64,000 nt of DNA, from positions 1,736,001-1,800,000 of the forward strand of contig CBFFSA010000001.1 in NCBI GenBank assembly GCA_965644495.1, read 5' to 3'. The notes beneath the pieces were generated by a model. That model did not search any database. It was given only the letters and a program-made list of their open reading frames with translations, and had not been told where the DNA came from. How positions within the stretch are numbered: the stretch's first letter is position 1; the number at the start of each line of letters is the position of its first letter. Source of the DNA: Perkinsela sp. CCAP 1560/9 (lineage: Eukaryota > Protista > Euglenozoa: Kinetoplastea). This document shows positions 1 to 57,478 of this stretch, piece by piece. Both the position numbers and the translations under genes were made by a program.

Positions 1-143
1 AACAGCCCCCCTTTACCCCCCTTTCAACAAATTTTAATGTACTCCCCCGCCAGGAGACATTGATAGTTTATATGAGCCCTCATCGAAGCGATCACACTAC
101 CTCTTTTCCTGTACCATAGCTCTCTGTGTTTTATTTTGTTTGT

Positions 144-3312: not shown

Positions 3313-3614
3313 AGAGAGAGAATGAAACGATTGAAAGAAATTTCGATTTAAAAGCAAAATAAGTAGGGTTGTATTATGATTGGGCGGAAATATTTTAGCA
3401 TGTACTTGTTATTAGTGGAATGAAATAACAATTAGTGGAATGAGCTAGTAATTAGGGAAAATCGAACAGAACAGTAGTGGGAACGAAATTGCCTTACCTT
3501 ACCTTGCCTTCTAACTTGCCTTATTACCTTCTTTACCATCTTATTACCGTCTTACCTTCGTAAGACCTTATTACCGTCTTACCTTCGTACTTTCTCGTCT
3601 CATGTGGAGCACAC

Positions 3615-22563: not shown

Positions 22564-23193
22564 ATACATGTTAGTGTTAGTTTTAAATAAATATTGTGGC
22601 GGAGTGGCAAGAACTTAAAGCTTGGAGCACGTGGTTCTCAGAGGGGTGACTCTGGGTGGGAGCGCCTGGAAGCGCCAAGGACCTTTGTCTTGATTTTTTT
22701 TTTGCTTCAGTTAGAGGATATTATTAGAAGTAACATTTTCACATAGTAGCAGAATTATAAATAATTTTTTTCTTTAATAATAATCATTATTAAATAATTA
22801 TTATAGTAGTATAATCAGTAGTATAATAGATTATTACAACTGCTAATCCAACTTTCTATACGCATCACGATTCGTATTTTCAGTCATATTATTTTCTATC
22901 TTTTCACATATCAAGAAGCGTTGATGGCGATCAATTAATAGAGTGGTAGTTTGTGCGTAACCCTGGAAATTCTATTTATTGGTTGTGTACGAAGTGTCCA
23001 TGATCCAATGAAAATGAATTTCATTCATTCACACGGTATTATTACCGAAACAGACGTTCGGTATTCTGGATATTGATCAGCAAGGACACACTTATTTTTT
23101 CATCTACTCAAATATAACATACGGATTCATTAGTTGCTGTTCGTTTCAATCACTGTAGTGAAATTTATATTACGTACTAGTATACTAATCCAC

Positions 23194-23952
23194 ATGTCAG
23201 ATCCGTTACTTCCACACTCCCGTGTCGGCAAAGCGCGGGCGAATCTGCCAGATGAATACTATTTGGCCCAATTCTTACAAGACATACAGAACCATCACCC
23301 CTCTTGGAATACGGATACTCCCGCTTGCGAATGGGATACAGTTGGGTGTAATGAAAAAGGTGAAATTAATGCAATTCGATGGTCTGACCAGTTTCTCATC
23401 GGGACTCCTCATTGGACACATTTATCAAGTATAATGTGTAAACATTTGGATCTTTATATCAATAGACTAACGGGGGGAATCGATCTACAACTGCTACCGA
23501 TTAATATTTGGAGTTTTGATGTCAGCTTTAACAATTTTGGTGGCACTATATATTTGGAAGAAATGCTGCCGTCTTTACATCTTCTGAATCTTTCTTCCTG
23601 CAGGTTGCATGGGCCCATCTCGCTATACATGCTGCCCCCCGAGGTTGAGTCTGTAATTTTAAGTCATAATGCGCTCGCGGGAGGTCTCTATTTAGGGGCA
23701 CTGCCGAGCCGCATGTATTATTTGGATTTGTCCCACAATCATTTTTTCGGCCCTGTAGATTTGCATCTCTCCCACTTCATCTCCTTACGTTTGAGCCACA
23801 ATGTAAATTTAAGTGGTGAATACGATCCGATATGGATTCCCCCCACACCCAACGTAGAAGGAACTCAAATCAAGATACTCCCCAAGCGCGGGTCGTACCG
23901 ATGCTTCTTACCTTTACGTTACGTCTTTGATTCCAACGTATGGCAGTTTTAA
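23194..23952 (+). CDS. LRR protein, tandem duplicate of 21808
   Basis: Upstream ~170 bp and N-terminus identical to the 21808 gene (offset 1386 bp). Confidence 0.9.
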   Translation: MSDPLLPHSRVGKARANLPDEYYLAQFLQDIQNHHPSWNTDTPACEWDTVGCNEKGEINAIRWSDQFLIGTPHWTHLSSIMCKHLDLYINRLTGGIDLQLLPINIWSFDVSFNNFGGTIYLEEMLPSLHLLNLSSCRLHGPISLYMLPPEVESVILSHNALAGGLYLGALPSRMYYLDLSHNHFFGPVDLHLSHFISLRLSHNVNLSGEYDPIWIPPTPNVEGTQIKILPKRGSYRCFLPLRYVFDSNVWQF

Positions 23953-25270: not shown

Positions 25271-26414
25271 CTAAACATGTGTGTATTGTGAGAATGTGTA
25301 AAACGTATAAGGCTTCTTTGTTTTCACAGAAATCGGAAAGAAGGCTAAATTTACTTTATAAGGCTTATACGTACGTGAGGCTTATACGTATAAGGCATAT
25401 CTATTTTTTTATGTTAAGCGCTCGACATACAGTGACTCAAAAAGTTGTTCAAATGTTTCTCTTTTTTAAGGGTCGTAGACAATACATCATTGTATTACCG
25501 TAGGATGGGGGGTATTGTATATTTTTGCGCTATTTTCCGCACGCTGGACGACTCAATTGGGTTATTTTTGTTTGATTCCACAAAAGAGACCTATCCTTGT
25601 TTTTTTTCAAAGTGAGAGGACCAGGATTGTATTGTGAGAATGTATTAATCATATATTTCATTAAATTTGTACGGGGAAGTTGTAAAGATGGCTTGTTTTC
25701 TTACAGCGTTTAAATGCTCATGCACTGGTTCGGTGAATAAGGTGTCAAGACCTTTCGAACTTGAAAGACTGCGAATATTTCAGCGTTCCGCGTCCACGGT
25801 TTAAACGCAGCGCCCCGAACTCGCTCAATGAGAATCCAGACTTTTGTGTTCCAAGTCACGGCATGAGAGCGTCGTAACGGAACGCGTTCCATTCAAATGG
25901 TAAAATTGATGTGAAACCTCATCAAGGTACAGAAACTGTATTTTTATCCTGAGTTACGTACGACACATACAGCGACCTTTTACTTTGGGGAACGCACTTA
26001 TTCCGACGGTTCAAAACAATAAATTGAAACTCTTACATGCGGATACAAACTGCGCCATTTTGGCGAGCAAGGAGACACCGTAACGGACCGTCGTAAGAGT
26101 AAAAGGATTGAACTGTTCTTTTTCATTGGATTCATGAATTTCTTTTGCACTCGATTCCTTCCTCAGCTTTCTGTGATGGACGCAAACTTACTTTCTGTGG
26201 TAGTCGCAAAAGACGAAATCTACTGAACCGTTTTGCCCGAGGAAAAACGGTAGAGGAAACGGTAGAGGAATAATCTACAAAAGGCTCATCCATACTAATC
26301 GATAATAAGAGCTCAAAGCTATACCACGACTTTACAATTTATCTGATCTGATCGAAAAACATTCTACGACTTGAGAATTCACTCACATTCATTACTACAA
26401 GTTTCTTGAAATTT

Positions 26415-27248: not shown

Positions 27249-27680
27249 ATCAATTTGATCCATTTTCGAGAGTACTGAAAGGGTTGAAACCCTCCCAGGC
27301 GCTCCCAGTGAATATCCATGGAGTCTATACTTAGAGCTTTGGAAGGGGTGAGTGAGAATTCATCTCAAAGTCGAGAAGTTAACATTGTAGAAAATACCAT
27401 TCTGTAGGTACATGTACCCACCATTCTGTAGTTGTGTGATCAGTAATTACTTGAACCATGTTTGAGGATAGTATACCTAGTAGGTATACTAGTGGTACGT
27501 TATACTAATTGGGTACGGTATACTAAATTTTTATTACGAAAGCACAAATGCTAATTTCGCGCCTTTTGCCTTTCGCCATTTCCCGGCGCATTCCTTCTCT
27601 GTACTTGCTAGAAAATGTGGTGTCTTTAAAAATATTGGGGTGTTTTACTCGTGCTCGGTACGCAGCACGCGACGTCTCAG

Positions 27681-27770
27681 AAAGATACGGTTTCTGTGCC
27701 TTGTTGGTACATTTTTCTTGCCCTTCCTTTCTTTTCCCGGAAACGGGCACACATTTTATCCTGTAGTGCC
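27681..27770 (+). ncRNA. Degenerate spliced-leader RNA gene relic
   Basis: AAAGATACGGTTTCTGTGCCTTGTTG|GTACATTTT..CCCGGAAACGGG, homologous to 42582-42660. Confidence 0.65.
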
Positions 27771-27844
27771 ACGGAAAATAGAGACAGATAAAATAACAGT
27801 ACCTTGATAAGATTTTTGACGGTATCACTACTGCAGTAAACCTT

Positions 27845-30863: not shown

Positions 30864-31409
30864 GATTTAAGGGATACTGGATATGATTTTGTGAGCGTTA
30901 CCGTATTGTTTATATCGATGTAGATTTCACATCCCATTTCAACCTTTTGTTGGATCACAGTACAAAGGTCGCGATTTCCTTGCTCGGCACATAAGATGAT
31001 GATATGCGAACCGTGTATGTGTCCATCTACTGAGTGTATCAAACAAGGACGAGTAATCAAAGTGATTTTCGTTCTCTTCGTTTACGTTGCCTATTTTTCT
31101 TATTGAAACTCTTTACCCAGTTTTGCTGAACAAACAAAGGTTGTCCATATTTTTGATAAACATTGAGTCTCAGTGTTGAGCTCTCAATGAAAGCAGCTCA
31201 GAGGCAAAAGAATTAGATCGGGAAGCGAAGCCCAACCCTATATTTTTTGACAATCAAACAGATTTGTACGTGAACTAATTCAGCGGAAAACTATTTAAGT
31301 CATCACACGAACCGTTATTTGAGGGAACAAATTCTAAACTTTAACGCAATTGTTTTGTTCAACCTCTTTCGTTCTACCTCCTTCTTTTGTTCAACCTCTC
31401 TCCTTTTTC

Positions 31410-32255
31410 ATGCATATGCTTGCCGTAAAGTTTGAAGAAGCCCCCTCCCCGGATCGTAAGAGACGCAAATTAAGTGATAAAGAAAACACAACGGTGAGTC
31501 CGAGACCGCTTAAAAGGGCCGCAAAAGTGAGCGTCGCGAATCTTCCATTGGAATACCAACTCGCACGTCTCATTCGCAATATTGAAAATCCTCACTACAC
31601 GTGGGACACGGATACGCCTGTGTGCGAGTGGGAAGGAGTTGAATGTAATGAACAAGGGGAACCGGACGATATTTATTGGGAGCAAATGGAGCAAATGGAA
31701 GAGTCGGACTGTCAAGATCATTGGGAGTACGGTTTAAAAGGGAGTCTCGACTTGACGGATATTCCGAACCTGGTGGAGCGTTTTTCTGTGAATAATAATC
31801 AATTGAGAGGCAAGGTTCGATTAGATGGTTTACCCAACAAACTTGAAAATTTAGACCTGAGTCAAAATGAATTTGAGGGTTCATTAGATTTGACATCTCT
31901 TCCTCCATCACTGTATTCGTTTTGTTCATACATGAACAACTTTTCAGGGAATGTGTGTCTTACGAGATTGCCACCTATCATGGGGCGACTCTTGTTGGGG
32001 GACAATCGTTTGACTGGGCCCGTAGATTTGACGTTGCTTCCATCGAAAATGTGGCATTTGAATTTAGAACGAAACGAGTTTAGTGGTGAAATAAATCTCG
32101 CGAACTTACCCACCATAATCACATTTTTGAAGTTATCCCATAACAAATTCAGCGGTGAATTGTGTTTGGACAAACTTCCGTCATCTCTTTCACACCTCGC
32201 GTTGGGTCACAACTCATTTAAAGGAGAGATAGACGCCAAATACTTGCGTGACTGA
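31410..32255 (+). CDS. LRR protein (KRRK/KEN subfamily)
   Basis: First ATG 31410; SPDRKRRKLSDKEN; cap plus 6 LRRs. Confidence 0.92.
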   Translation: MHMLAVKFEEAPSPDRKRRKLSDKENTTVSPRPLKRAAKVSVANLPLEYQLARLIRNIENPHYTWDTDTPVCEWEGVECNEQGEPDDIYWEQMEQMEESDCQDHWEYGLKGSLDLTDIPNLVERFSVNNNQLRGKVRLDGLPNKLENLDLSQNEFEGSLDLTSLPPSLYSFCSYMNNFSGNVCLTRLPPIMGRLLLGDNRLTGPVDLTLLPSKMWHLNLERNEFSGEINLANLPTIITFLKLSHNKFSGELCLDKLPSSLSHLALGHNSFKGEIDAKYLRD

Positions 32256-34576: not shown

Positions 34577-35428
34577 ATGCTTACCGTAAAGTTTGAAGAA
34601 GCCCCCTCCCCGGATCGTAAGAGACGCAAATTAAGTGATAAAGAAAACACAACGGTGAGTCCGAGACCGCTTAAAAGGGCCGCAAAAGTGAGCGTCGCGA
34701 ATCTTCCATTGGAATACCAACTCGCACGACTCATTCGCAATATTGAAAATCCTCACAACACGTGGGACACGGATACGCCTGCGTGCGAGTGGGAAGGAGT
34801 TGAATGTAATGAACAAGGGGAACCGGACGATATTTATTGGGAGCAAATGGAGGATTCTGAAGGTCCAGATCATTGGGAGTACGGTTTAAAAGGGAGTCTC
34901 GACTTGACGGATATTCCGAACCTGGTGAAGCGTTTTTCTGTGAACAAGAATCAATTCAGAGGCGAAATTCGATTAGATGGTTTGTCGGATAAACTTGAAA
35001 ATTTAGACGTGAGTCAAAATGAGTTTGAGGGTTCATTAGATTTGACATCGCTTCCCCCATCACTATATTCGTTTTGTTCATACACGAACAAGTTCACGGG
35101 GAATGTGTGCCTTACGAGACTTCCACCTCCCATGGAAGAACTCTTGTTGATGGAAAATCGTTTGAATGGGCCCGTAGATTTGACACTGCTTCCATCGAAA
35201 ATGAGGCATTTGAATTTAAGACGAAACGAGTTTAGTGGTGAAATAAATCTCACGAAATTACCTCCAACAATGAAGTATTTGTCGTTATCCCATAACAAAT
35301 TCAGCGGTGAATTGTGTTTGGACAAACTGCCGCCAGGTCTTTGGGGCCTTGCGTTGGGTCACAACTCATTTGAAGGAGAGATAGACGCCAAATATTTACC
35401 AAACATACCAGTAGGACAAATTCGGTAG
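34577..35428 (+). CDS. LRR protein (KRRK/KEN subfamily)
   Basis: Close paralog of 31410. Confidence 0.93.
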   Translation: MLTVKFEEAPSPDRKRRKLSDKENTTVSPRPLKRAAKVSVANLPLEYQLARLIRNIENPHNTWDTDTPACEWEGVECNEQGEPDDIYWEQMEDSEGPDHWEYGLKGSLDLTDIPNLVKRFSVNKNQFRGEIRLDGLSDKLENLDVSQNEFEGSLDLTSLPPSLYSFCSYTNKFTGNVCLTRLPPPMEELLLMENRLNGPVDLTLLPSKMRHLNLRRNEFSGEINLTKLPPTMKYLSLSHNKFSGELCLDKLPPGLWGLALGHNSFEGEIDAKYLPNIPVGQIR

Positions 35429-36880: not shown

Positions 36881-37678
36881 ATGCTGAAAGCAGTCGGAGA
36901 GAACGTACATGAAGCCGAAAAGCTGGAAGTTGTCCGGCTAATTGAGGAGAAGCGGTACGAGGACAAGAAAATTTCTGGAAAGCTGCTTCTCGAAATCGCG
37001 ACGCATTACATCGCTAACAAAAAGGAAGGGGTGGGAGCCGCTAAAGAGGAGAACGTCAAAGATTCCGGTCCCCAGGAAACGGAAGGAACGCTATCTGCTC
37101 TTATAGGCACCTTCTCAATGCCATTTCTATCGGAGACGTTCGTCAACTCAATAGTCCCCCGCGGGAAAATAGTAACGAAGCAGGAAACAAAGATGGCGAA
37201 CGAAGTGGCCGAAGTGCTCGCGAAAGGCGAGGAGGTAGTTTTGGAGGAGTTAGTGTCGGGGGGGCCTGGCTCTCTAAAAGAAAAGTGACTCGTGCCAGGC
37301 ATGCACGTCATGGTATGGGAGCTACTTGAGAAGGTAGCGGGAAGAGTGATGACCGAGCTGGCTGCCGATTTGGGGGCCGAGGTTGATTTCACCGGAAAGT
37401 CACTCTTACATGGCATCATGGCAGGGGGGAAGAGTGCCTGTTTGGTACGAGAAGCCATTCAAAAGAAAGCAAGGATTATGTCCGCAACCGAGAAGCTGCA
37501 ATCCAAGGCTCGTGTTGCGAAGCTTGAGGATCTACCGCCCTCAAGGAGGTTCGCCGTTTACACCAACGAAACATCAGCTGCGGGAGAACGAAGGTATAAA
37601 ATGTTATAACTGCAAACGGATGGGCTACTTCGCGGCGAGCTGCCGCTACAAGACGTATTGTTATAAATGTAAGGCTTT
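36881..37678 (+). pseudogene. gag-like remnant with zinc knuckles
   Basis: CYNCKRMGYFAASC (degenerate CCHC) followed by CYKC; broken frames. Confidence 0.45.
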
Positions 37679-37734
37679 GTTTGAATGGGCCCGTAGATTT
37701 GACACTGCTTCCATCGAAAATGAGGCATTTGAAT
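37679..37734 (+). pseudogene. LRR gene fragment (matches 35160-35215), left part of a split copy
   Basis: 56-bp identity; continues at 43164. Confidence 0.85.
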
Positions 37735-37737
37735 AAA

Positions 37738-37765
37738 ATAAAGATACAGTTTCTGTACCTTGTTG
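37738..37765 (+). repeat. Last 28 nt of the SL exon; 5' copy of the target duplication
   Basis: ATAAAGATACAGTTTCTGTACCTTGTTG is identical to 42582-42609. Confidence 0.88.
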
Positions 37766-40700
37766 AATTATTTTCAATTTTGTACTAACTTTATCTTCCG
37801 GAGCATGTCCTCCAATGTCACCTCACCGGCTCCAATCGCGCACGACGGCCTCCCTCGAGGACCTGTTAGCGCGCAGCGACATCCCCAGAGCTTTCACTTC
37901 ATCCAAAGTCGAGCGATGCCCGTCAAAATCCGCCCCTCGGACAGCGTCACATGGTCATATTTCCCAGACACGCATGCCGCGGCCATTGCCCTCACAGAAC
38001 GAGAGTTCTTCTCGAGTGTCCACACGGCTAAAGCCTCGATCGGCAAAACCTTGAAGTCGGAAAGCAAAAGAAGTGATGGTCTGATAATCAAATCGTGTAC
38101 AATTCAAGATGTCATTGAAAACAACGCATGTGAACACCTAAAATACCAAGAAACGGGAAACCCAAGTCGCACGTTTTGTCACGCCAGCTGGAGTTCCGCC
38201 TACAGGGATTCGTTCATGCAGCTTAATGCAGTGTACTCCTCTTCGAACGCGCTCGGCAAAGCGGTCACGAAGAAATTATGTGGTAGTGACATCCCAGGAT
38301 TACGAAAGTTCCGAATCACACACGTAACTCGAAAAATACAACCCATTGAACTACTACGGGGTCACCCAGAGATTACCTATGACGCACCCTATAGGATCCG
38401 AGATGACTCTTACAAGGTGTCACCGCCATCATATGCCTCAAAACACGCTTCAGAACCACGTGCCCCATGCGCTCATAAATGCCGGGACAAAACATCGTGT
38501 CTCCACGCATGTTGCAAAGTACGACACGAAGGATCTCTTCCGCCTAACGTGTCTCTTCCCTCTCCGGAGGACGTTGCCCCTATGGAACCCTCACTTACTT
38601 CTCACAGAAGACCGTGCAAACACACATGCCGCGACAAAAGAAATTGTCTGCACAAGTGTTGCAAAGTGGGGGTCCCCATTACAGATGCCCAAAGTAGTCC
38701 TCAACCAGTGCTACCCCTCGTGGAACCACCCATAGCTCGAGCAAGTAGTCCACTACCAGCAGGCTTATCCATAGACACCGATCAGCATACCACACCAGAC
38801 ATCGGACACTTCGAAGAGGTCAGGGATCCGGAACCGCAAATCCGCCCTCACTAGGATACATGGATGACGCCGCACACCACACACAAACATCAACCAATGA
38901 AGTCAATTATCGCCCCTGTCGGCACATATGTAGCAACAAAGCTCAGTGCAAGCATCGATGTTGCAAAAATGGTGTCATACAACCTAGCACGGAGGTTGTA
39001 CTCCGCGAACCCGTCCGTACCTCTCCAGACCTGCACACCAGCAATGACAACAACACCCCTGCTCCAACAGCGCCTCGTCGCAACTGCGCTCATAAATGTA
39101 AGGACAAGGCAACATGTAAACATCAATGCTGCCAGAAAGGAGTTCTCCTCAAAGTCGCTGAAGTAGCGTACTCTGCCATATGCTGGACCACGAGAAATAT
39201 ACTGTGCCCTGCAATGGGTGATGCGGAACGCGCCGGAAAAGCTTCACTACCGCCCCCTCCACGCGCAACAACCTACCCCCCAGTTCACACCAACCCCTCG
39301 AATCGCTCGAGTCCAATACTGAGCCCTGTGCGGAATGCACCACTTGTCCACGCCCCGCAACATGATTCCCCTTCTGTACGCCGCTCCTCGCCTTCTTTAC
39401 CCCTTGTGCAGTCCGCAACAGATCCCACGCCTCTGCCCTTACCTTTGCCTTCCCCACCAGAAGGAAACTGCGAACACACGATATTGCAGCGCATCCCTCG
39501 TGTCCGGCAAGTCCCGGCTACCCGACCTCTCCCTGAACTGCAGAACCTACTCGAAACATTCCGCACAATAAATGGAGGTCGCGTTCTAGTCCGTTTCACA
39601 GAGGAACAGTGGGAGAGTATTATTGCGAAGATCGAGGAACGCTGCAACTCGTATATCCACCTGGCGCGAGACAAAGAGGACGCCCTGTCGCAAGCTGAAA
39701 TACTCTCAGCAATCCTCGCTGTAACTGCATTCGAGGCCGCACGGGAAAACGATCCGACGCACGGCTTTCTTATACAAGTAATATAGTCATTGAACGCACA
39801 GTGAAAGTACTCAGTCAACACGTTCGACAACTTAAACGTGCGCTAACGTTCATGAAGGGTCCTGCGAGAAATAAGCAACGAGGGGAAATAAAGGAAGCCG
39901 AAAAGGCACTAAAACAGTACATGGAAGAATCCAGTTTGCAGAGGAAAGAAATCGATCGACGGTGGGCTCTTACGCGATTCCAGCGAAATCCCTGGACAGC
40001 CGCGGGCGAATGCTTAGATCGCGTCGACCCATCTACCTCAGAAACTGAGACGTCCTACCCTACAGTTCCTGTACAGGAGGTTGAAAGATTCTTTGTGGGC
40101 TCAATGTCTAGACCAGAAGAGATACACAAGATTCCTCCAGCAGAATTTACGAAACCAATTCCCCTTGATGAGATGCAATGGTCAGATATTGACTCAGACA
40201 TGATCGCAGCAGCCGTCGCATCCAAACGCTCTGTGGCTGCCCCAGGCTCGGACACTGTATCGAACGCGCTGCTAAAGCGCTGCGCCCCTGTCTTTACCCA
40301 CATGGCACAGGTGTTTAATGATGTCCTAACATTTGGTGTATGCCCTCCAACCTGGAAAACTGCGGTCACTCGACTTATCCACAAAGGGGGCCCCACCTCA
40401 AGTATGGAAAACTGGCGGCCGATAAGCTTGACTAGCTGCATTGGGAAGCTTTTCCACTCAATCCTCAGTCACCGTATCCTTCAGCATTCCCTGGATTCCA
40501 ATGCCCTGGACACAACAATACAAAAAGGCTTCTTGCCGCATATGAATGGGACAGTTGAGCACACCCAGGTCCTTTGCGAGATCCTCGAGCACCAGCGGCG
40601 CCACAAAAAGCAATACGTACTTGCCCAGTTTGATATCAAAAACGCGTTTGGATCCATACCCCATACAATTTTATTTCAGGCCTTAAAATGGGCGCGCGTC

Positions 40701-42581
40701 TCACCGATCCTCATTAACTACATCAAAGCGTTGTACGAACGAGCGTCTACACAAATTAAATGTGCAGAAGGACTCACGAAGTCTATTGAGATAGGTCGTG
40801 GCGTATTGCAGGGAGATACGCTTTCGCCTATTTTATTCAACTTGGCGATGGAGCTAGTTCTGCGTTTTGTCCGTTCAAGTTGCCCCGAATACGGGATCAC
40901 GTGGAATGCGAAAGAAATTTTTCTAAAGGCCTTCGCAGATGACCTTACTATTCTGACAAATACCCCCCAGGAAATGCAGAACGCTACAAACGCACTCGTC
41001 AAAGTTCTAAGCGATATTGGGATGAAACTAAACGTGAAAAAATGCCGGCTGCAACACATGGCGATGACGCAAGACTCTGGATATATTACACGCCGACCAC
41101 AGATCGTGATCGGCACGTCACCTATCCCGCATATATGTGATAATGGTAGCACATTTTTAGGCATGACGCTCGCACCCGGTGCTCAACAAGGCATGACGCT
41201 CGCACCCGGTGCTCAACAAGGCAAGACACTCTTTCTAAAACTACGAACCCGTCTGCGAGCCTGGTTGCGTAATATATCTTCCAGCGCACATGACCTTCCC
41301 GCGCGCCTGTGGATATACAATAACGGCATCATCTCTCGTCTGCGGTATTCCTTCGTCGTGAACTCATGCCTTACCTTCAATCACGTACTTCGGCTACAGC
41401 GATGCGCCACACGCGAAATTCGGAAATGGTTAAACGTAGCGAAATCAGCAACTAGTGAGCTGCTCTATTCAGAGCATGACTGGAATCTCATGAGTCTGTC
41501 AAAACTTTGGCTTCTTTCCACTGTGGGGACAATGGAACAAATGGATAAATCGCGTGATCCCGAGGTCCAGCACGCTTTACGTGAGCGCATCAGGCGAGAA
41601 GCGAACAAAAGGAGAGCAGGAGACATTCGCCCGCCGACGGATATGCACAGTACAAGCCATAGTAACGTCCGAAGACTCCTTGGAAGCGAATACGAGCGAC
41701 ACCTCACGGAAGCCGTCCAACGGCGTACTGCCGTAGCAGGACGATGGTTCAGAATCGCAACGGAAGCAGACCTTGCGAGAGACTTCGCCGCCGCCCTATG
41801 CAACCTCAAGAGTGAATCGCTTTCGCGGTTCACATCCTCAGTGCTTACCGAGACGCCGCTCCCAACCAGGGCATCTCTTCGTAGGTGGGGCGTATCGACA
41901 CATGCGAGCGATAAATGTCCCATCTGTGACAGCGAGACACAAACTACGCGGCATATTCTATCTGGTTGTAGGAAGTCACTCGAACAAGGGAGGTATACCC
42001 TAATAACATGGTATTACAGGCATTAGCGAACTCCGTACAACGATCCTCCTCCACTAGTCAATGTCACTTCGATCTCCCCCACTTCCGCTCCACCCACACG
42101 TGGCTCACGAACCTTGATACTGAGCTACGTCCTGACGGATGGGTGAAACTATCTAATGGAGAAGAATACATTATAGAACTTACCTGCCCTTGGGAGGAGA
42201 ACTTTGAGTTCGCACACGAGCGCAAAATAGAAAAGTACACGAGTTTATACCACTCTAGAAAACTCGACCATCCTACCACATTCCTACTCGTCTTCGAGGT
42301 GGGAGCGAGAGGCAAACTGCATATGTCGGTCCGAACGCTCAACTCTCTCTTCATGGGAAATGAAGAAGCGGTTGCAGTGTGTCGCCGAAATATGACGACT
42401 AGCGATCTCCGGGGAAGTTTCATAATTTTCCAGCACCGCGAGAACAAACAGTGGATGGAGGTTAGTTCTGGGGAGTGAGTCGCTGATTGTCAGGTGATTT
42501 CAACGCGTTTTGTGCGCGTAATATGGAACTCCCATAATCACCGTCTAATCTCTGTAGAATATTTCCTACATGATAACATAT
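37766..42581 (+). mobile_element. Full-length non-LTR retrotransposon (RT+REL) inserted in SL sequence; frameshifted
   Basis: ORF pieces 37760, 38860, 39801, 42008; four CxHxCxxKxxCxHxCC fingers, FADD, CPIC, RPD, ELTCPWEEN; flanked by a 28-bp direct repeat. Confidence 0.9.
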
Positions 42582-42660
42582 ATAAAGATACAGTTTCTGT
42601 ACCTTGTTGGTACATTTTCCCTTTAGTTCATCTTTTCTTTCCCCGGCAACGGGCATAATC
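42582..42660 (+). ncRNA. Spliced-leader RNA gene, 3' part of exon plus intron
   Basis: Euglenozoan SL core CAGTTTCTGTAC..TTG followed by GT donor at 42610, pyrimidine tract and CCCG-GCAA-CGGG hairpin. Confidence 0.75.
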
Positions 42661-42901
42661 TTACTGTTTTATATGCCCGTTGCCGGCCGGCACTAAGGCC
42701 GAAACTGTCCCTCTTTCTCGGCGAAGTAGGGGACGCGCTTCCACCCCATCAACCCTCCCCGGCTCACTCCTTGAGTGGGTTTTCTTCCCTCCCCGGCTTT
42801 CTTCTTCTCGCGCCTTTTTCTTCCCGGGGAGCCATGCGCCATGGTGGCCTCCCTTGAGGACCACTGGGCGTGGCTCTGCCTCGTCTTATCGCGAGGCAGC
42901 G

Positions 42902-43054
42902 GTCGGTTGCAGTGCGCCCCTCCGGCTGCGTAAAGAGGTGGTGAGTTGCCTGGACCACCTCTACCGACTGGGACCGAGTCGGTTGCAGTGCGCCCCTCCG
43001 GCTGCGTAAAGAGAGGGCGAGTTGCCTGGACCCCCTCTACCGACAGAGTCCGAG
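42902..43054 (+). repeat. 76-bp tandem duplication with foldable structure; third partial copy inverted at ~50590-50645
   Basis: GTCGGTTGCAGTGCGCCCCTCCGGCTGCGTAAAGAG.. at 42902 and 42978. Confidence 0.88.
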
Positions 43055-43163
43055 CTAAACCCCCTTGGTGCGACACCCGTCAATACGGATTGTGCCGATG
43101 ATATCGGCTGTCGCATCAAGGGCTGTATCTCTGCGCCAACGAGCGCATGAACATCAAAATTAC

Positions 43164-43303
43164 GACGAAACGAGTTTAGTGGTGAAATAAATCTCACGAA
43201 ATTACCTCCAACAATGAAGTATTTGTCGTTATCCCATAACAAATTCAGCGGCAAATTGTGTTTGGACAAACTGCCGCCAGGTCTTTGGGACCTTGCGTTG
43301 GGT
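43164..43303 (+). pseudogene. LRR gene fragment (matches 35220-35359), right part of the split copy
   Basis: Near identity to the 34577 gene. Confidence 0.88.
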
Positions 43304-43633
43304 TTTTGTTACTGTATCAGTAAGGCAAAGAAGGCCAAGCTTTATTTCACACTTTAAAAAAATATCATATTGTGTGGTCATATAGACTTTCACAATTTTT
43401 ATAGTAATTTTATAGCATCTTAAATTGAGGGGCTGCGGGTGGGGATTCTGTGCGATCTCGGTGCGGTCTATTAAATATATTTAATAGATTTATTTCTACG
43501 TAAAATAACTCGAAGACGTTTTTATCACTCGTCCCTTTATCACTTGAACCGTTCTTTGGAGAGGACTAATTTTAAGCTTGAACATATGTTTTTTTACTCT
43601 GTTCAATCTCACAGCTCCTTCATGCATACATTT

Positions 43634-44464
43634 ATGCTTACCGTAAGCTTTGAAGACGCACGCTCCCCAGATCATAAAAGGCGGAAGTTAAGTGATAAAG
43701 AAAACACAACGGTGAGTCCGAGACCGCGTAAAAGAGCCGCAAAAGTGAGCGTCGCGAATCTTCCATTGGAATACCAACTCGCACGTCTCATTCGCAATAT
43801 TGAAAATCCTCACAACACGTGGGACACGGATACGCCTGCGTGCAAGTGGGATCGGGTAATTTGTAACGAACAAGGGGAACCCGACGATATTTATTGGGAG
43901 CAAATGGAGGATTCGGACTGTCAAGATCATTGGGAGTACGGTTTAAAAGGGAGTCTCGATTTGACGGATATTCCAAAATTGGTGAAGCGTTTTTCTGTGA
44001 ACAAGAATCAATTGAGAGGCGAAGTTCGATTAGATGGTTTGCCGGATAAACTGGAAAATCTAGACTTGAGTCAAAATGAGTTTGAGGGTTCATTAGATTT
44101 GACATCGCTTCCCCAATCACTATATTTGTTCTGTTCATACAAGAACAACTTTACAGGGAATGTGTGCCTTACGAGACTTCCACCTCCCATGGAACAACTT
44201 TTGTTGGGGGATAATCGTTTGACTGGGTCCGTAGATTTGACGTCGCTTCCATCGAAAATGTGGCATATAAATTTAGAACGAAATGAATTTAGTGGTGAAA
44301 TAAATCTCGCAAAGTTACCTCCGACAATGAAGTATATGTCGATATCCCATAACAAATTCAGCGGCGAATTGCGTTTGGACAAACTGCCGTCAGGTCTTGA
44401 GCAGCTTGCGCTGGGTCACAACCAGTTTGAAGGAGAGATAGACGCTAAATTCTTGGAAAACTGA
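43634..44464 (+). CDS. LRR protein (KRRK/KEN subfamily)
   Basis: ORF 43544; ATG 43634 is equivalent to the paralog starts. Confidence 0.92.
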   Translation: MLTVSFEDARSPDHKRRKLSDKENTTVSPRPRKRAAKVSVANLPLEYQLARLIRNIENPHNTWDTDTPACKWDRVICNEQGEPDDIYWEQMEDSDCQDHWEYGLKGSLDLTDIPKLVKRFSVNKNQLRGEVRLDGLPDKLENLDLSQNEFEGSLDLTSLPQSLYLFCSYKNNFTGNVCLTRLPPPMEQLLLGDNRLTGSVDLTSLPSKMWHINLERNEFSGEINLAKLPPTMKYMSISHNKFSGELRLDKLPSGLEQLALGHNQFEGEIDAKFLEN

Positions 44465-44725: not shown

Positions 44726-45117
44726 ACCCATCCATAGTGCTTTTTGATGCATCATGAACTCCATTTGCCAGCATGCATCCATGGCCCTGACCATGTTGTA
44801 TCATGAACCATGGAAGTCATTTGTAGCATGTACGATGAGAATACCATTCGCGTCCCACAAATCCGTATATCTTTCCTGACGCACTGCGTTTACACAACAT
44901 CTCAGGACATCATATCCCGATGAGGACGTTTCTTTTCGCCTTCCCGGGGAAGATATCCCGCGCTTTTCCCTGTCTCGCTGCGGAAGGCAAAAGGCTCCAG
45001 CAGGGAACGTTGATTGCGTTTACCCCTGCTGGGACTAAATATCTCTGCAGGTCTTGCCCTGCATGAAAAAACACAAGACATACGAATGAATACACGAAGA
45101 ATGTTCGTGCAGTTTCT

Positions 45118-48414: not shown

Positions 48415-49254
48415 ATGGATATGCTTACCGTAAAGTTTGAAGACGCACCCTCCCCAGATCATAAGAGGCGCAAGTTAAGTGATAAAGAAAACACAACGGT
48501 GAGTCCGAGACCGCGTAAAAGAGCCGCAAAAGTGAGCGTCGCGAATCTTCCGTTGGAATACCAACTCGCACGTCTCGTTCGCAATATTGAAAATCCTCAC
48601 TACACGTGGGGTACGGATATGCCTGCGTGCGAGTGGAATCGGGTGGAGTGTAACGAACAAGGCGAACCAGAAGCTATTCATTGGCATCAAATGGACCAGT
48701 CAGCATGTCCAAATCTTTGGGACTACGGTTTAATAGGAAGTCTAGATTTGACGGATATTCCGAAAATGGTGAAGCATTTTTCTGTGCAGCATAATCAATT
48801 GAGAGGCGAAATTCGATTAGATGGTTTGCCGGATAAACTAGAAAATCTAGAGCTGAGTCAAAATGTGTTTGAGGGTTCATTAGATTTGACATCGCTTCCC
48901 CCATCACTATATTCGTTTAGCGCATCCATGAACAAGTTCACGGGGAATGTGTGCTTTACGAGACTGCCACCTACCATGGAAGACCTCTTATTGTGGGAAA
49001 ATCGTTTCACTGGGCCCGTAGATTTGACGTCGCTTCCATTGAATATGAACGAGATGAATTTAGAACAAAATGAATTTAGTGGTGTAATAAATCTCACAAA
49101 GTTACCTCCGACAATGAAGTACTTGACTTTGTCCCACAACAAATTCAGCGGCGAATTGCGTTTGGACAAACTGCCGTCAGGCCTTGAACGGCTTGCGTTG
49201 GGCCACAACCCGTTTGATGGAGAGATAGACGCCAAATACTTGGGCGATTCGTAG
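48415..49254 (+). CDS. LRR protein (KRRK/KEN subfamily)
   Basis: Paralog of 31410/34577/43634. Confidence 0.93.
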   Translation: MDMLTVKFEDAPSPDHKRRKLSDKENTTVSPRPRKRAAKVSVANLPLEYQLARLVRNIENPHYTWGTDMPACEWNRVECNEQGEPEAIHWHQMDQSACPNLWDYGLIGSLDLTDIPKMVKHFSVQHNQLRGEIRLDGLPDKLENLELSQNVFEGSLDLTSLPPSLYSFSASMNKFTGNVCFTRLPPTMEDLLLWENRFTGPVDLTSLPLNMNEMNLEQNEFSGVINLTKLPPTMKYLTLSHNKFSGELRLDKLPSGLERLALGHNPFDGEIDAKYLGDS

Positions 49255-50496: not shown

Positions 50497-51485
50497 CCGT
50501 TACCCCCCCATTACTTCGCCTCCCCCCTTACTTCACCACATTTAGTCGCTGGACGTGTGGTGAAGTAAGGGGGGTGTCGGATTTTTCTCAGACAACTTAC
50601 CACCTCTTTACACAGCCGGAGGGGTGCACTGCAACCGACCGTTGCATCGGGGTAAGGCGAGGCAGAGCCACGCCCAGTGGTCTTGAAGGAGGGACACAGA
50701 TGGCGTACAAACATCGATGAACAAAGGTTCTTGGTGCACACGTCGGTGAAGACGACGCCGTCATACCAGGATTTTAAACCACAGTCCGGTTTAACGTTCC
50801 GGGGGGAAATGATAACGGTTACAGGAATGCTACGTAGCTGCAGGAATGATAACTTTTGAAGATTGTCTTGGGTTTACCGTACGATTCGTCGACGCAACGG
50901 GTAGCAGCGCGTTGTTGCCGCCTTGTACTAACGAAAACAGGTAGAGGACTTCGGCCTCGAAACTTCCAAATCTATCTGTGAAGGGTCTGGCTTGCTAGTG
51001 ACCGATCGGAGCTATCCGGAATGATTTAGTATGTTGAACCATTTCTAATTCAGAACGTTTTTCTTCCATGTCAGTTTCATCATCATGTCAGTTTGATCAT
51101 AAAGTTGCGCCACAGTGTTTTGTAGTTCTAAAATTTAAATGGGTGTTCAATGGGTTATGTTCTGCGACACCATTTAAATTTCACGATGTAAGAAATTTTC
51201 ATGGGGGGAAAGTTAAAAGCCCATGGGACATTGTAGACAAGCTAAACGAAACATAAAATATAGAATGTGCAACACGAGGTATTACAACACTCAAGAAAAG
51301 GAAATTACGCCCAATGTCGATAGCATAGTGTACTTCAATAATTTGAGGATTTTCGAGAGAACTATAAATTGATCGAACTTTGAATCATTTATTCGCCCCC
51401 CTTACTTCACCATCCCCCTTACTTCACCACAAAGTACGGGTCTTGGGCCAAAAAGTGGGGGCTAAGTAAGGGGGGGGGGTAACGG
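50497..51485. mobile_element. Non-autonomous pogo/Tc1-type element
   Basis: TA|CCGTTACCCCCCC ... GGGGGGGTAACGG|TA; subterminal CCCCTTACTTCACCA repeats. Confidence 0.8.
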
Positions 51486-55381: not shown

Positions 55382-56401
55382 TTAATACTTCGTAAGTCCC
55401 CCCTTCGCCCTAATTACTGCCCTTAAACGACGGGGCATGCTGCGGACAAGAGGAAGACATGCACTCGGAGGAAGGCCTGCCCACGCTTTTTGGGCGCGTT
55501 CCCAAAGTTCCAACATTCCTACGGGAGGATCTGGATGATCCGCAGTCGACTTTTTGAGCTCGCCCCATAGGTGCTCTATGGGATTTAAATCGGGAGACTG
55601 CGGGGGCCAGTCTAGGACACACAATTCTTGTAAACGAAGGAATTCCCGGGCCTTCTTACTCGTGTGCTTTGGATCATTATCTTGTTGGAAGATGATCCGG
55701 TCCTTCATGACTTCCAACTTGTGGAGGGAAGGAGACAAATTCTGTTGAAGTATTTGAACGTACTGTTCAGCATTCATGTTGCCATGAACCAGAGCAATGG
55801 AGCCCACGCCGTGAGCCATCATACACCCCCATACCATGATGGATCCCCCACCGTACTTCACGGTGCTGTGAGTATTTCGCTCTGAAAGTGCTTCCCCAAA
55901 GCTCACCCACGCCCACCGGCTGCCATTCGACTCGAAACGGCAGATCTTACTTTCATCAGTGAAAAGCACATGGCTCCAGTCGGCGTTCGTCCAATGCTCA
56001 TACTTCTTTGCAAAGGCAAGACGTAGAGCTTTGTGACGCTTCGTAAGGTGGGGTTTCCGTAATTTCTTCTTCCCCTTCAAACCACGCTTCCGAAGGGAAA
56101 CCCGAATGGTTTGGGGCGAAACATCTGCAACCCCCTCATCTCTCAACCTTTTACTGGTCGCGACTGCATCCTTAGTTGCACCGCTGGTGATGAGGCGGCG
56201 GACGCGATTGGAGCATGTCTCTGTAAGCTTGCGAGGGCGATCTGTTTTCGGTTTGTTAACTAAGTTGGGTAGGTACTTTTTCTTAATGTTACTTACATTT
56301 CCTACGCTCAATTGTAGATCTGACGATACCTTCCGAATTGATAATCCGTTCTTTAGTTTTTCTATAACAAGCCTACGTAGATCACTGGGTGTACTGCGCA
56401 T
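55382..56401 (-). CDS. Tc1 DD34E transposase, left copy
   Basis: FTDESK, QQDNDPKH, SPDLNPIE with 34-aa D-E spacing; ATG 56401. Confidence 0.95.
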   Translation of the reverse strand: MRSTPSDLRRLVIEKLKNGLSIRKVSSDLQLSVGNVSNIKKKYLPNLVNKPKTDRPRKLTETCSNRVRRLITSGATKDAVATSKRLRDEGVADVSPQTIRVSLRKRGLKGKKKLRKPHLTKRHKALRLAFAKKYEHWTNADWSHVLFTDESKICRFESNGSRWAWVSFGEALSERNTHSTVKYGGGSIMVWGCMMAHGVGSIALVHGNMNAEQYVQILQQNLSPSLHKLEVMKDRIIFQQDNDPKHTSKKAREFLRLQELCVLDWPPQSPDLNPIEHLWGELKKSTADHPDPPVGMLELWERAQKAWAGLPPSACLPLVRSMPRRLRAVIRAKGGLTKY

Positions 56402-56458
56402 AAAAAGTATAGTAAATGGAGTAAGATTTTCTTTATTTACCTTGCGTTTCATTGCACT

Positions 56459-57478
56459 ATGCGCAGTACACCCAGTGATCTACGTAGGCTTGTTATAGAA
56501 AAACTAAAGAACGGATTATCAATTCGGAAGGTATCGTCAGATCTACAATTGAGCGTAGGAAATGTAAGTAACATTAAGAAAAAGTACCTACCCAACTTAG
56601 TTAACAAACCGAAAACAGGTCGCCCTCGCAAGCTTACAGAGACATGCTCCAATCGCGTCCGCCGCCTCATCACCAGCGGTGCAACTAAGGATGCAGTCGC
56701 GACCAGTAAAAGGTTGAGAGATGAGGGGGTTGCAGATGTTTCGCCCCAAACCATTCGGGTTTCCCTTCGGAAGCGTGGTTTGAAGGGGAAGAAGAAATTA
56801 CGGAAACCCCACCTTACGAAGCGTCACAAAGCTCTACGTCTTGCCTTTGCAAAGAAGTATGAGCATTGGACGAACGCCGACTGGAGCCATGTGCTTTTCA
56901 CTGATGAAAGTAAGATCTGCCGTTTCGAGTCGAATGGCAGCCGGTGGGCGTGGGTGAGCTTTGGGGAAGCACTTTCAGAGCGAAATACACACAGCACCGT
57001 GAAGTACGGTGGGGGATCCATCATGGTATGGGGGTGTATGATGGCTCACGGCGTGGGCTCCATTGCTCTGGTTCATGGCAACATGAATGCTGAACAGTAC
57101 GTTCAAATACTTCAACAGAATTTGTCTCCTTCCCTCCACAAGTTGGAAGTCATGAAGGACCGGATCATCTTCCAACAAGATAATGATCCAAAGCACACGA
57201 GTAAGAAGGCCCGGGAATTCCTTCGTTTACAAGAATTGTGTGTCCTAGACTGGCCCCCGCAGTCTCCCGATTTAAATCCCATAGAGCACCTATGGGGCGA
57301 GCTCAAAAAGTCGACTGCGGATCATCCAGATCCTCCCGTAGGAATGTTGGAACTTTGGGAACGCGCCCAAAAAGCGTGGGCAGGCCTTCCTCCGAGTGCA
57401 TGTCTTCCTCTTGTCCGCAGCATGCCCCGTCGTTTAAGGGCAGTAATTAGGGCGAAGGGGGGACTTACGAAGTATTAA
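56459..57478 (+). CDS. Tc1 DD34E transposase, right copy
   Basis: Same protein except GRPR instead of DRPR. Confidence 0.95.
   Translation: MRSTPSDLRRLVIEKLKNGLSIRKVSSDLQLSVGNVSNIKKKYLPNLVNKPKTGRPRKLTETCSNRVRRLITSGATKDAVATSKRLRDEGVADVSPQTIRVSLRKRGLKGKKKLRKPHLTKRHKALRLAFAKKYEHWTNADWSHVLFTDESKICRFESNGSRWAWVSFGEALSERNTHSTVKYGGGSIMVWGCMMAHGVGSIALVHGNMNAEQYVQILQQNLSPSLHKLEVMKDRIIFQQDNDPKHTSKKAREFLRLQELCVLDWPPQSPDLNPIEHLWGELKKSTADHPDPPVGMLELWERAQKAWAGLPPSACLPLVRSMPRRLRAVIRAKGGLTKY

What the first reader, a model, noticed from the sequence alone, without database searches (positions are those of the whole stretch)
37738..42660. Retrotransposon inserted into spliced-leader sequence, with the duplication ending exactly at the splice donor
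Seen: an identical 28-mer ATAAAGATACAGTTTCTGTACCTTGTTG flanks the element. The downstream copy continues with GT and an SL-intron-like region; the upstream copy joins straight onto the element. Known: CAGTTTCTGTAC..TTG|GT is the conserved 3' end of the 39-nt kinetoplastid/diplonemid SL exon, and CRE1/SLACS/CZAR insert near nt 11-12 of it. The last 28 nt correspond to nt 12-39. Inference: the endonuclease motifs here (RPD..ELT[V/C]PWEEN, EVGARG) look Hero/NeSL-like and differ from the CRE-type fragments in the same window. This may be an independent SL-targeting lineage. The 5' copy could be a TSD or a reverse-transcribed trans-spliced leader.
Basis: partly seen in the sequence, partly recalled or inferred. 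Interest (0 to 1): 0.9.

Follow-up and report, generated by a model that had tools for sequence, protein, structure and literature searches.

The report
Retrotransposon headed by spliced-leader fragment
The two identical 28-base spliced-leader pieces are not a target duplication in a spliced-leader gene. They are the built-in 5' ends of two neighbouring mobile elements, a 4.8-kb retrotransposon and its short non-coding partner, which sit together inside a leucine-rich-repeat gene fragment.

Summary
Observation confirmed. The 28-mer is exact at 37738-37765 and 42582-42609 and equals the last 28 nt of this genome's spliced leader (SL).

Interpretation mostly not supported.
- All 13 copies of this retrotransposon family (X) that I examined start with the same SL fragment. 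Their flanks are unrelated and lie outside SL genes. Only the window copy is followed by a second 28-mer.
- That second 28-mer is the 5' end of a separate 578-bp non-coding repeat (about 100 copies). It also starts at SL nt ~12 and shares X's 3' hairpin, so it is X's SINE-like partner, not an SL gene. Its sequence after the head does not resemble the true SL intron.
- X plus SINE fill one site with no duplication or deletion, as an uninterrupted paralogue at 35215|35216 shows.
- X and SINE copies prefer one position of an LRR coding repeat: 11 of 39 junctions against 0.4% expected.

X is a single-ORF element with a reverse transcriptase and an R2-type zinc-finger and restriction-like endonuclease domain. 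The window copy is frameshifted. The window's other RT is 51% identical with the same endonuclease motifs, so the claimed contrast fails.

A 32%-identical relative from another organism carries that host's own SL version as its head.

Placement relative to CRE, NeSL and Hero could not be tested, and no RNA data exist. Other first readers of this scan noted SL-headed retrotransposons in other windows of this genome.

The parts
37679..37734 (+). Upstream half of the host LRR gene fragment. It corresponds to residues 196-213 of the intact 283-aa paralogue at 34577-35428.
   Evidence: 100% identical to 35160-35215. tblastn result.
37735..37737 (+). Three extra A at the 5' junction, absent from the empty site.
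   Evidence: Comparison of filled and empty sites.
37738..37765 (+). SL-derived head of retrotransposon X, the last 28 nt of the SL exon.
   Evidence: Present at the 5' end of 13 of 13 family copies.
37766..37804 (+). 5' UTR of X. It contains TACTAAC (37783-37789), a pyrimidine run (37790-37799) and an AG (37802-37803) just before the ATG, which may form a trans-splice acceptor module.
   Evidence: Sequence read. Conserved in most subfamilies. The function is inferred.
37805..42478 (+). X coding region. It is a single ORF of 1561 aa in the intact copy L032:1110-5792:-. Here it is broken by frame changes near 38833, 39777 and 42002.
   Evidence: ORFs and frames. tblastn of the intact protein. 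Other copies carry +7 nt at 38832, a 39-nt replacement at 39775-39784 and +4 nt at 42002.
38466..39140 (+). Four N-terminal Cys/His motifs of the form C-x3-C-x5-C-x-H-x-CC. They are presumed to bind nucleic acid.
   Evidence: Translations. No Pfam match.
40377..41090 (+). Reverse transcriptase domain.
   Evidence: PF00078, E 1.5e-34. Best solved relative is R2Bm 8gh6, E 8.5e-34.
41900..42478 (+). CCHC zinc knuckle plus restriction-like endonuclease (RHN, PD, ExT, K..Y, GxRG).
   Evidence: Invariant columns of alignment A3. Model pLDDT 89.7. Foldseek top hits are R2 proteins, E 2e-7.
42547..42581 (+). 3' terminal module of X: ATCTC, a 5-bp hairpin (42553-42557 pairing with 42566-42570), TGA, and an A/T tail.
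   Evidence: Shared by all X and SINE subfamilies. Three covarying pairs and no broken pair in 11 sequences.
42582..43159 (+). SINE-like non-coding partner element. Its head is 42582-42609 and it has an internal 76-nt duplication. Its 3' module is the same type as X's and ends in ...CATCAAAA.
   Evidence: About 103 genomic copies by pattern. Boundaries from 26 copies. 3' module.
43160..43303 (+). Downstream half of the host LRR gene fragment, corresponding to residues 214-261 of the paralogue.
   Evidence: 97% identical to 35216-35359.
35160..35359 (+). Uninterrupted paralogous target (empty site at 35215|35216) inside the intact LRR gene 34577-35428.

Best explanation
Window 37738-42581 is a frameshifted copy of a single-ORF non-LTR retrotransposon (X). 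It encodes N-terminal Cys/His fingers, a reverse transcriptase and a C-terminal R2-type zinc knuckle plus restriction-like endonuclease.

The template RNA of this family begins with the last 28 nt of the host spliced leader, so every new copy carries that fragment as its 5' end wherever it lands. The 3' end is a small hairpin module that the RT presumably recognises.

A 578-bp non-coding element (SINE-like, 42582-43159) has the same SL head and the same 3' module and is mobilised in trans.

In the window, one target-primed reverse transcription event probably copied a SINE RNA to its 5' end and then jumped to the 3' end of an X RNA. This left X and SINE head to tail in one site of an LRR gene fragment, with no target duplication. 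A second insertion exactly at the SINE's 5' boundary cannot be excluded.

Shown: the anatomy, the copy census, the empty site, the shared ends, the LRR site preference and the RLE fold. Inferred: the template jump, recognition of the hairpin by the RT, and how the RNA 5' end at SL nt ~12 is made. Possible routes for that 5' end are an internal promoter, processing, or an RT stop on a trans-spliced RNA.
For: - Heads: 13 of 13 X copies from subfamilies 67-97% identical start with the SL fragment. Nine start exactly at ATAAAG and the rest within a few nt, all at unrelated flanks.
- 3' ends: they stop at ...GATAACATA(T/C) with unrelated downstream DNA in 13 of 14 cases.
- SINE: 26 copies examined. 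They start at the same SL position, are 570-578 bp long and end in ...CATCAAAA. The genome-wide pattern count is 103.
- 5' stutters that re-copy ATAAAGATA... (L022, L070, L051) indicate that the RNA template ends there.
- Shared 3' hairpin with three compensatory pairs. SINE subfamilies carry the hairpin variants of particular X subfamilies.
- The empty site at 35215|35216 matches both flanks with only AAA added.
- SINE-SINE tandems join with AAA(A)G microhomology (L067, L070).
- Intact ORFs of 1561, 1624 and 1578 aa exist elsewhere.
- RLE: invariant CCHC, RH, PD, E, K, and a fold match to R2.
- A 32%-identical family from other samples is headed by a different SL version.
Against: - No RNA data were available, so the 5' end of the template RNA is only inferred from DNA copies.
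- The head starts at the position equivalent to the CRE/SLACS/CZAR insertion point, between nt 11 and 12 (PMC5814959). That may be more than coincidence and hints at an SL-gene-resident ancestor or unseen master copies.
- The SL gene array is represented by only two repeats in the assembly, so insertions there could be hidden.
- Exact abutment of X on a SINE head, plus two SINE-SINE tandems, would also be produced by an endonuclease that nicks just 5' of the head.
- The head is invariant across subfamilies whose other DNA is about 70% identical. Simple inheritance does not explain this.
Confidence: 0.75

Rival explanations
1. First reader's model. X is an SL-specific element whose endonuclease nicks SL DNA at nt 11/12 and at the splice donor, making a 28-bp target duplication. 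The window shows such an insertion into an SL gene or SL-gene relic.
For: Identical 28-mers flank X, and the downstream one is followed by GT. The head start equals the CRE-clade insertion point (PMC5814959). CRE elements make target duplications (PMC3636483). X-SINE and SINE-SINE junctions fall at head starts.
Against: The upstream 28-mer is not preceded by SL nt 1-10. 12 of 13 X copies and 23 of 26 SINE copies have no SL sequence after their 3' end. The downstream unit is a 578-bp dispersed repeat whose post-head sequence does not resemble the true SL intron (z = -0.3). The composite fills an LRR site without duplication. 305 contiguous full SL copies are uninterrupted across nt 11/12, and all 8 loci with the true GTATGAG intron carry SL sequence right up to the 28-mer, with no element at that point.
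Confidence: 0.08
2. The head is newly acquired in every cycle. X RNA is an ordinary trans-spliced mRNA with a full SL, and X's own RT regularly stops about 11 nt before the capped, modified 5' end. The copies therefore start at nt ~12.
For: The head is 100% conserved between subfamilies that are otherwise about 70% identical. It matches the host's SL version in another organism, where head length varies (28 and 34 nt) and heads are doubled. L058 shows a relic head re-spliced at the internal CAG. Other retroelement families and SL RNA retropseudogenes in this genome carry nearly full SLs with garbled first 2-4 nt, as expected from cap-proximal modifications.
Against: In genomic copies the head abuts the UTR as ...TTG|AATT, with no AG acceptor, so a head-bearing copy cannot be re-spliced at that junction. 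No head-less X copy with an acceptor was found among 13, including the intact ones. Stutters always restart at ATAAAG, as expected for a true RNA end.
Confidence: 0.12
3. Two independent insertions. A SINE landed in the LRR site first. X later inserted exactly at its 5' boundary because the upstream LRR half-site was still intact.
For: X and SINE both prefer the same position of the LRR unit. The family makes no target duplication, so a re-hit would leave no scar.
Against: It requires base-exact reuse of the site. Junction microhomology in SINE-SINE tandems fits template switching equally well. The sequence alone gives no way to separate the two models.
Confidence: 0.2

Closest known systems
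CRE clade of trypanosomatids (SLACS, CZAR, CRE1, CRE2)
   Same: Non-LTR elements, single-ORF in most species, with an RT and a restriction-like endonuclease, tied to the spliced leader. X's head begins at the position that corresponds to their insertion point between SL nt 11 and 12 (PMC5814959, PMC12278014).
   Different: CRE elements sit inside SL RNA genes, make target duplications and end in poly(A). Copies mostly have 1-2 zinc-finger motifs, and the C2H2 structure is reported for CZAR (PMC12278014, PMC3636483, PMC5814959). X copies lie outside SL genes and carry the SL piece themselves. X shows no duplication at the one site that could be checked, ends in a hairpin plus an A/T tail, and has four C-x3-C-x5-C-x-H-x-CC motifs. 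Their RT relationship was not testable here.
R2 elements and their internally deleted non-autonomous derivatives (SIDEs)
   Same: Best sequence and fold matches among solved structures. Single ORF with the order N-terminal fingers, RT, CCHC, RLE. A non-coding partner shares both termini. R2 RT is known to jump between template ends, and R2 RNA in some species keeps target-derived sequence at its 5' end (my knowledge, not checked here).
   Different: R2 targets 28S rDNA and is cut from a co-transcript by a ribozyme. No ribozyme family was detected in X's 5' region. X's preferred target is a protein-coding LRR repeat.
NeSL-1 of Caenorhabditis
   Same: An RLE-type element associated with spliced-leader (SL1) genes (PMC3636483).
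   Different: NeSL inserts into SL genes with target deletions (PMC3636483). No protease-type domain was found in X by Pfam. Phylogeny untested.
Relict-SL retrogenes of dinoflagellates
   Same: Genomic, intron-less copies that carry a spliced leader at the 5' end, sometimes with stacked truncated relics, taken as proof of reverse-transcribed trans-spliced RNA (PMC6050394, PMC5585692). This genome shows the same marks (L058, L072).
   Different: Those are cellular genes copied passively. Here the SL piece is the fixed 5' terminus of an autonomous retrotransposon and its SINE, with a constant truncation point.
Stringent LINE/SINE pairs that share a 3' stem-loop (for example eel UnaL2/UnaSINE1; my knowledge)
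   Same: The autonomous and non-autonomous partners share a short conserved 3' hairpin with covariation.
   Different: Here the partners also share an SL-derived 5' end.

Membership tests
RLE-bearing (R2-like) non-LTR retrotransposons | Reverse transcriptase domain of LINE type | tested here: met
   PF00078, E 1.5e-34 in the window and 1.9e-33 in the intact copy. R2Bm 8gh6, E 8.5e-34.
RLE-bearing (R2-like) non-LTR retrotransposons | C-terminal CCHC knuckle plus PD-(D/E)XK restriction-like endonuclease downstream of the RT | tested here: met
   Invariant C25, C28, H37, C42, R54, H55, P98, D99, E113, K129, Y133 in 18 sequences. The model (pLDDT 89.7) matches R2 proteins at E 2e-7, TM 0.63, followed by PD-(D/E)XK cap-snatching nucleases.
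RLE-bearing (R2-like) non-LTR retrotransposons | Single ORF and no APE endonuclease | tested here: met
   Intact 1561-aa ORF in L032. No PF03372 hit.
CRE clade (SLACS/CZAR/CRE1/CRE2) | Copies inserted in SL RNA genes between exon nt 11 and 12 | tested here: not met
   0 of 13 X copies lie in an SL gene. All 8 loci with the true SL intron keep SL sequence contiguous across that point. Caveat: the SL array is probably collapsed in the assembly.
CRE clade (SLACS/CZAR/CRE1/CRE2) | Target-site duplication on insertion | tested here: not met
   Comparison of filled and empty sites shows no duplication. Only this one site was checked.
CRE clade (SLACS/CZAR/CRE1/CRE2) | Poly(A) 3' tail | tested here: not met
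   X ends in a hairpin plus ...ACATA(T/C), sometimes followed by (AT)n.
CRE clade (SLACS/CZAR/CRE1/CRE2) | RT groups with CRE references in a phylogeny | not testable with these tools
   Two word-index searches and one exhaustive search returned only unnamed relatives. No named CRE, NeSL, R4 or Hero sequence could be fetched.
NeSL / Hero clades | RT groups with NeSL-1 or Hero references | not testable with these tools
   Same limitation as above. The quoted RLE motifs are shared by many unnamed environmental relatives, so they are not diagnostic.
LINE/SINE partnership | Non-coding short element that shares the RT recognition end with the autonomous element | tested here: met
   The 3' module is shared, with matching subfamily variants. 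The 5' head is also shared. SINE length is 570-578 bp.
Retroposed trans-spliced RNAs (relict-SL copies) | SL exon without its intron at the 5' end of a genomic copy, with stacked relics | tested here: met
   305 full and about 200 truncated SL copies are dispersed in 21 Mb. Relics occur in L058 and L072. A-tailed SL RNA retropseudogenes are present.

The most novel reading that the evidence does not exclude
X represents a lineage of R2/CRE-like elements of kinetoplastid-type hosts. In this reading it has turned the SL segment downstream of the ancestral CRE-type cut site (nt 12-39) into a heritable 5' cis-element that tracks the host's own SL sequence. It has left SL genes for a new target, one fixed position of an LRR coding repeat, and it supports a dedicated SINE that shares both termini. 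The head would then work in 5'-end attachment, RNA recognition or expression, not as a passive scar.
Probability: 0.3. Interest if true: 0.8.

Novelty: new variant of a known kind. Interest (0 to 1): 0.6.

Why it matters
SL-associated retrotransposons are the textbook case of site-specific elements in trypanosomatids. This family keeps the SL link but in a different way. The element itself carries the SL piece, starting at the position where CRE elements cut, and it lands elsewhere, often at one position of an LRR gene repeat.

If the head is functional, it offers a handle on three questions:
- how RLE elements define and attach their 5' ends;
- how a retrotransposon is expressed in a genome where mRNA 5' ends come from trans-splicing;
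- how target specificity shifts from a small-RNA gene to a protein-coding repeat family.

It also bears on annotation. Roughly 500 SL copies in this 21-Mb genome are mostly heads of retroelements, not SL genes.

Tried and rejected
- **Ribozyme at the 5' end.** An Rfam scan of 37500-43400 at a permissive E-value found nothing relevant.
- **SINE post-head region derived from the true SL intron or from X's 5' UTR.** Global alignment scores were no better than shuffles (z = -0.3 and 0.7).
- **Naming the closest relatives.** The searches were search for homologous proteins with the protein and with a 16-sequence profile, an exhaustive representative search and a cluster look-up.
- **N-terminal half.** No usable hit in the ESM Atlas and no Pfam hit.
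- **Expression and mRNA 5' ends.** No RNA run holds the stretch. One small run guessed to be RNA has contigs with the leader near their ends, but genomic copies look the same, so it proves nothing.
- **Literature.** The exact SL sequence was found in no paper. The original CRE1 and CZAR papers are not held.
- **Organism.** Its identity stayed coded. The SL type, the mostly one-strand gene order and a 47%-identical EukProt transcript suggest a kinetoplastid-like euglenozoan, but this is unconfirmed.
Full report
**1. The observation**

The 28-mer ATAAAGATACAGTTTCTGTACCTTGTTG is exact at 37738-37765 and 42582-42609. None of 100 shuffles gave a match. Diverged copies lie at 25920 (-) and 27679 (+). 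Between the two exact copies lie ORFs in four different frames. They carry four Cys/His motifs, an RT (PF00078, E 1.5e-34) and the RPD / ELTCPWEEN / EVGARG motifs. The downstream 28-mer is followed by GTAC. The upstream one joins directly to AATTATTTTC and is preceded by sequence unrelated to the SL.

**2. The 28-mer is SL sequence, but most copies are not SL genes**

In the window's own genome (21 Mb, 110 contigs) the 28-mer occurs 504 times with up to 2 mismatches, on both strands and on most contigs.
- The only locus that looks like a real SL RNA gene is a 297-bp tandem pair at C1:661k. It reads AACTTTAACG, then the 28-mer, then GTATGAGAAGC and stem-loops. It has tRNA-like sequence and a 5S rRNA gene beside it. 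The exon is therefore 38 nt and the 28-mer is its 3' part. Counted from the splice donor, this equals nt 12-39 of a 39-nt leader.
- Six further loci with the same intron have garbled first 2-4 nt and end in A runs. They are retropseudogenes of SL RNA.
- 305 loci hold a nearly full leader. In the sample read, most of these follow a poly(A) run and head other retroelements whose first ORF carries a GSWDQF...STY.E.LYTT motif.

In this genome, then, reverse transcription has spread SL sequences widely.

**3. The element family (X)**

A DNA search with 37738-42609 found near-identical copies on C18, C9, C10 and C15, plus subfamilies 65-75% identical.
- I fetched 19 loci. In 13 of 13 copies with a 5' end, the element starts with the SL fragment. 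Nine start exactly at ATAAAG. The others differ only in the first 1-4 nt. The upstream flanks are all different and none is SL nt 1-10.
- At the 3' side, the near-identical copies end at ...CTACATGATAACATA(T/C), sometimes followed by (AT)n. The downstream DNA is unrelated in 13 of 14 cases. Only the window copy is followed directly by a 28-mer, and in L031 one lies 79 nt away.
- The 8 genomic loci that exactly match the X-type head-plus-UTR junction were all among those read. None has a longer head.
- Intact copies encode one ORF: 1561 aa in L032, 1624 in L042 and 1578 in L044.
- The window copy is defective. Relative to other copies it lacks 7 nt at 38832 and 4 nt at 42002 and differs at 39775-39784.

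**4. The downstream 28-mer belongs to a SINE-like partner**

The pattern 'exon end plus GTAC(A/T)TTTT' occurs 103 times.
- In 26 copies the unit starts at the same SL position as X. The same kind of small 5' variation is seen, together with stutters that re-copy ATAAAGATA.
- The unit runs 570-578 bp and ends in ...GCGCATGAACATCAAAA at unrelated flanks. Window coordinates are 42582-43159.
- Its sequence after the head is no more similar to the true SL intron than shuffled sequence (z = -0.3), nor to X's UTR.
- Its 3' end carries the same module as X: ATCTC, a 5-6 bp hairpin, then TGA. Across 11 X and SINE variants, three stem pairs change on both sides and none is broken.
- One SINE subfamily has almost the same hairpin as X subfamily L042.

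Shared termini at both ends make this the non-autonomous partner of X.

**5. How the window arrangement arose**

An uninterrupted paralogue lies 2.3 kb upstream, inside the intact LRR gene 34577-35428.
- 35160-35215 is 100% identical to 37679-37734, and 35216-35359 is 97% identical to 43160-43303.
- X plus SINE therefore fill a single site (...TTGAAT|TTAAGACG...) with three added A, no duplication and no deletion.
- Two SINE-SINE tandems (L067, L070) join as ...CATCAAAA|GATACAG, with AAA(A)G microhomology.
- The simplest reading is one target-primed event in which the RT reached the 5' end of a SINE RNA and jumped to the 3' end of an X RNA. End-to-end jumping is known for R2 RT (my knowledge).
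- A second hit at the same base cannot be excluded.
- The host LRR piece is only about 200 bp long (residues 196-261 of the paralogue). I cannot explain why.

**6. Target preference**

Many flanks of X and SINE copies encode LRR repeats. The junction sits at the same place in the repeat, after (V/I)DLxxLPxxLxxL and about three codons before NxFSG.
- 11 of 39 5' junctions lie 13-25 nt after an in-frame (V/I/L)(D/N/K/S)(L/F)xx(L/M)P motif.
- Only 0.4% of positions qualify even in this LRR-rich window (binomial P about 3e-18).
- The flanking LRR sequences differ from each other, so these are independent insertions.
- Other sites include (GT)n (L055, L081).

This is a preference, not strict specificity.

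**7. What kind of element it is**

- The best solved relatives are R2 proteins, aligned from the RT through the CCHC (E 8.5e-34).
- An 18-sequence alignment of the C-terminal 212 residues has invariant CCHC, RH, PD, E..T and K...Y. Its model (pLDDT 89.7) matches the zinc-finger plus RLE region of R2 from bird, turtle and silkworm (E 2e-7 to 1e-5, TM 0.6). Viral PD-(D/E)XK cap-snatching nucleases come next.
- The only other RT in the window (16858-19653) is 51% identical to X over RT and RLE and reads ELTVPWEEN and EVGARG.
- I could not obtain any named CRE, SLACS, CZAR, NeSL, R4 or Hero protein. All close relatives are unnamed. The requested phylogeny remains undone.
- By description, CRE elements sit in SL genes between nt 11 and 12, make target duplications, end in poly(A) and mostly have 1-2 zinc-finger motifs, C2H2 in CZAR (PMC5814959, PMC3636483, PMC12278014). 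X meets none of the features I could test.

**8. A relative in another host**

P0039 (1850 aa) is 32% identical over RT and RLE and comes from unrelated metagenome samples.
- In L080 its ORF is preceded by TAAAAGTTACAGTTTCTGTACTTTATTG and a 15-nt UTR.
- In L087 the head is 34 nt long and present twice.
- L088 starts within the head.
- That leader ends in CTTTATTG, not CCTTGTTG, so the head follows the host's own SL.
- A 40%-identical family (L081), from the metagenome sample that also holds 97%-identical X sequence, sits in (GT)n. It has a head from nt ~13 and the same type of 3' module.

SL heads are thus a trait of the lineage, not an accident of one copy.

**9. Why nt 12?**

This is not settled.
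- For an integral head: the template RNA appears to begin there, judged from the constant start, the stutters that restart at ATAAAG, and head-bearing intact copies. In addition, head-bearing copies read TTG|AATT, which lacks an AG acceptor, so the same junction cannot be re-made by trans-splicing.
- For regular renewal from the cellular SL: the head is invariant across diverged subfamilies, matches the host's SL in another species, and varies in length there.
- The start point coincides with the CRE-clade cut site, which suggests descent from an SL-gene-resident ancestor whose target-derived segment became part of the transcript.
- X's UTR carries TACTAAC, a pyrimidine run and an AG just before the ATG in most subfamilies. 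The translated mRNA may therefore be made by ordinary trans-splicing, while the unspliced, head-bearing RNA serves as the template. This is inference only.

**10. Verdict**

The proposed mechanism, an SL-gene insertion with a 28-bp duplication, is not supported. What is there is an SL-headed, R2-type retrotransposon with a dedicated SINE and a preference for one position of an LRR repeat.

Several first-stage notes on other windows of this genome describe SL-headed RLE retrotransposons outside SL genes. My census agrees with them and was made independently on fetched copies.

Noticed in passing
G000:C1:660000-663000 (L050): The only true SL RNA gene locus found is a 297-bp tandem pair beside a 5S rRNA gene (L050 2044-2162, 99 bits) and tRNA-like sequence. 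The assembly probably collapses a larger array.
   Followed up: partly
L074-L078 (C2:801.6k, C20:10.9k, C25:23.9k, C49:34.4k, C86:12.0k): Retropseudogenes of the whole unspliced SL RNA. The exon has its first 2-4 nt garbled, the full intron is present, and an A run follows. The garbled start is what cap-proximal modified bases would do to an RT.
   Followed up: partly
L006, L018, L026-L028 and others; 305 loci genome-wide: Other retroelement families carry a nearly full SL head (ATCTTTAACG plus the 28-mer) right after a poly(A) run. Their first ORF has a GSWDQF...STY.E.LYTT motif reminiscent of LsmAD domains. Many heads, like X's, are followed by AATTATTT(T)C, which is unexplained.
   Followed up: partly
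L058 (C1:4018006) and L072 (C1:1473.6k): Stacked leader relics. L058 reads ...TGTACCTTGTTG|TTTCTGTACCTTGTTG, as if re-spliced at the internal CAG. L072 has a partial leader directly before a full one.
   Followed up: no
L071 (C1:2476600-2486599): A 5093-bp tandem array in which a full SL copy sits between two copies of the same 35-nt sequence, like an isolated leader insertion with a 35-bp duplication.
   Followed up: no
window 16858-19653: A second, 5'-truncated X-like element (RT plus RLE, 51% identical to X) with an open 880-aa frame.
   Followed up: partly
window 27679-27790, 25920-25947 (-), 45041-45074, 50589-50705 (-): Further pieces of the same system: a diverged SINE head, another SL-headed fragment, an isolated 3' hairpin module, and a SINE internal fragment.
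   Followed up: no
window 126-1103, 5992-6858, 23134-23952, 31350-32255, 34577-35428, 43544-44464, 48415-49254, 62186-63100: A same-strand array of small (about 280-300 aa) LRR genes with a plant-type LRRNT_2 cap. They share a conserved ~200-bp block that contains the preferred insertion site.
   Followed up: partly
window 37679-37734 and 43160-43303: The LRR copy that hosts X plus SINE is only a ~200-bp fragment, nearly identical to the neighbouring gene 2.3 kb upstream. How this fragment arose is unexplained.
   Followed up: partly
window 2323-3357 (-), 55382-56452 (-), 56459-57478 (+): DNA transposases: one PIF/Harbinger-type (DDE_Tnp_4) and two head-to-head Tc1/mariner-type (DDE_3 plus HTH_Tnp_Tc3_2). 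In L079, a copy of X is itself interrupted by a Tc1-type element.
   Followed up: no
window 41160-41222: The window copy of X has an in-frame 30-nt duplication that other copies lack (read laying: 30 nt left out at 41159).
   Followed up: partly
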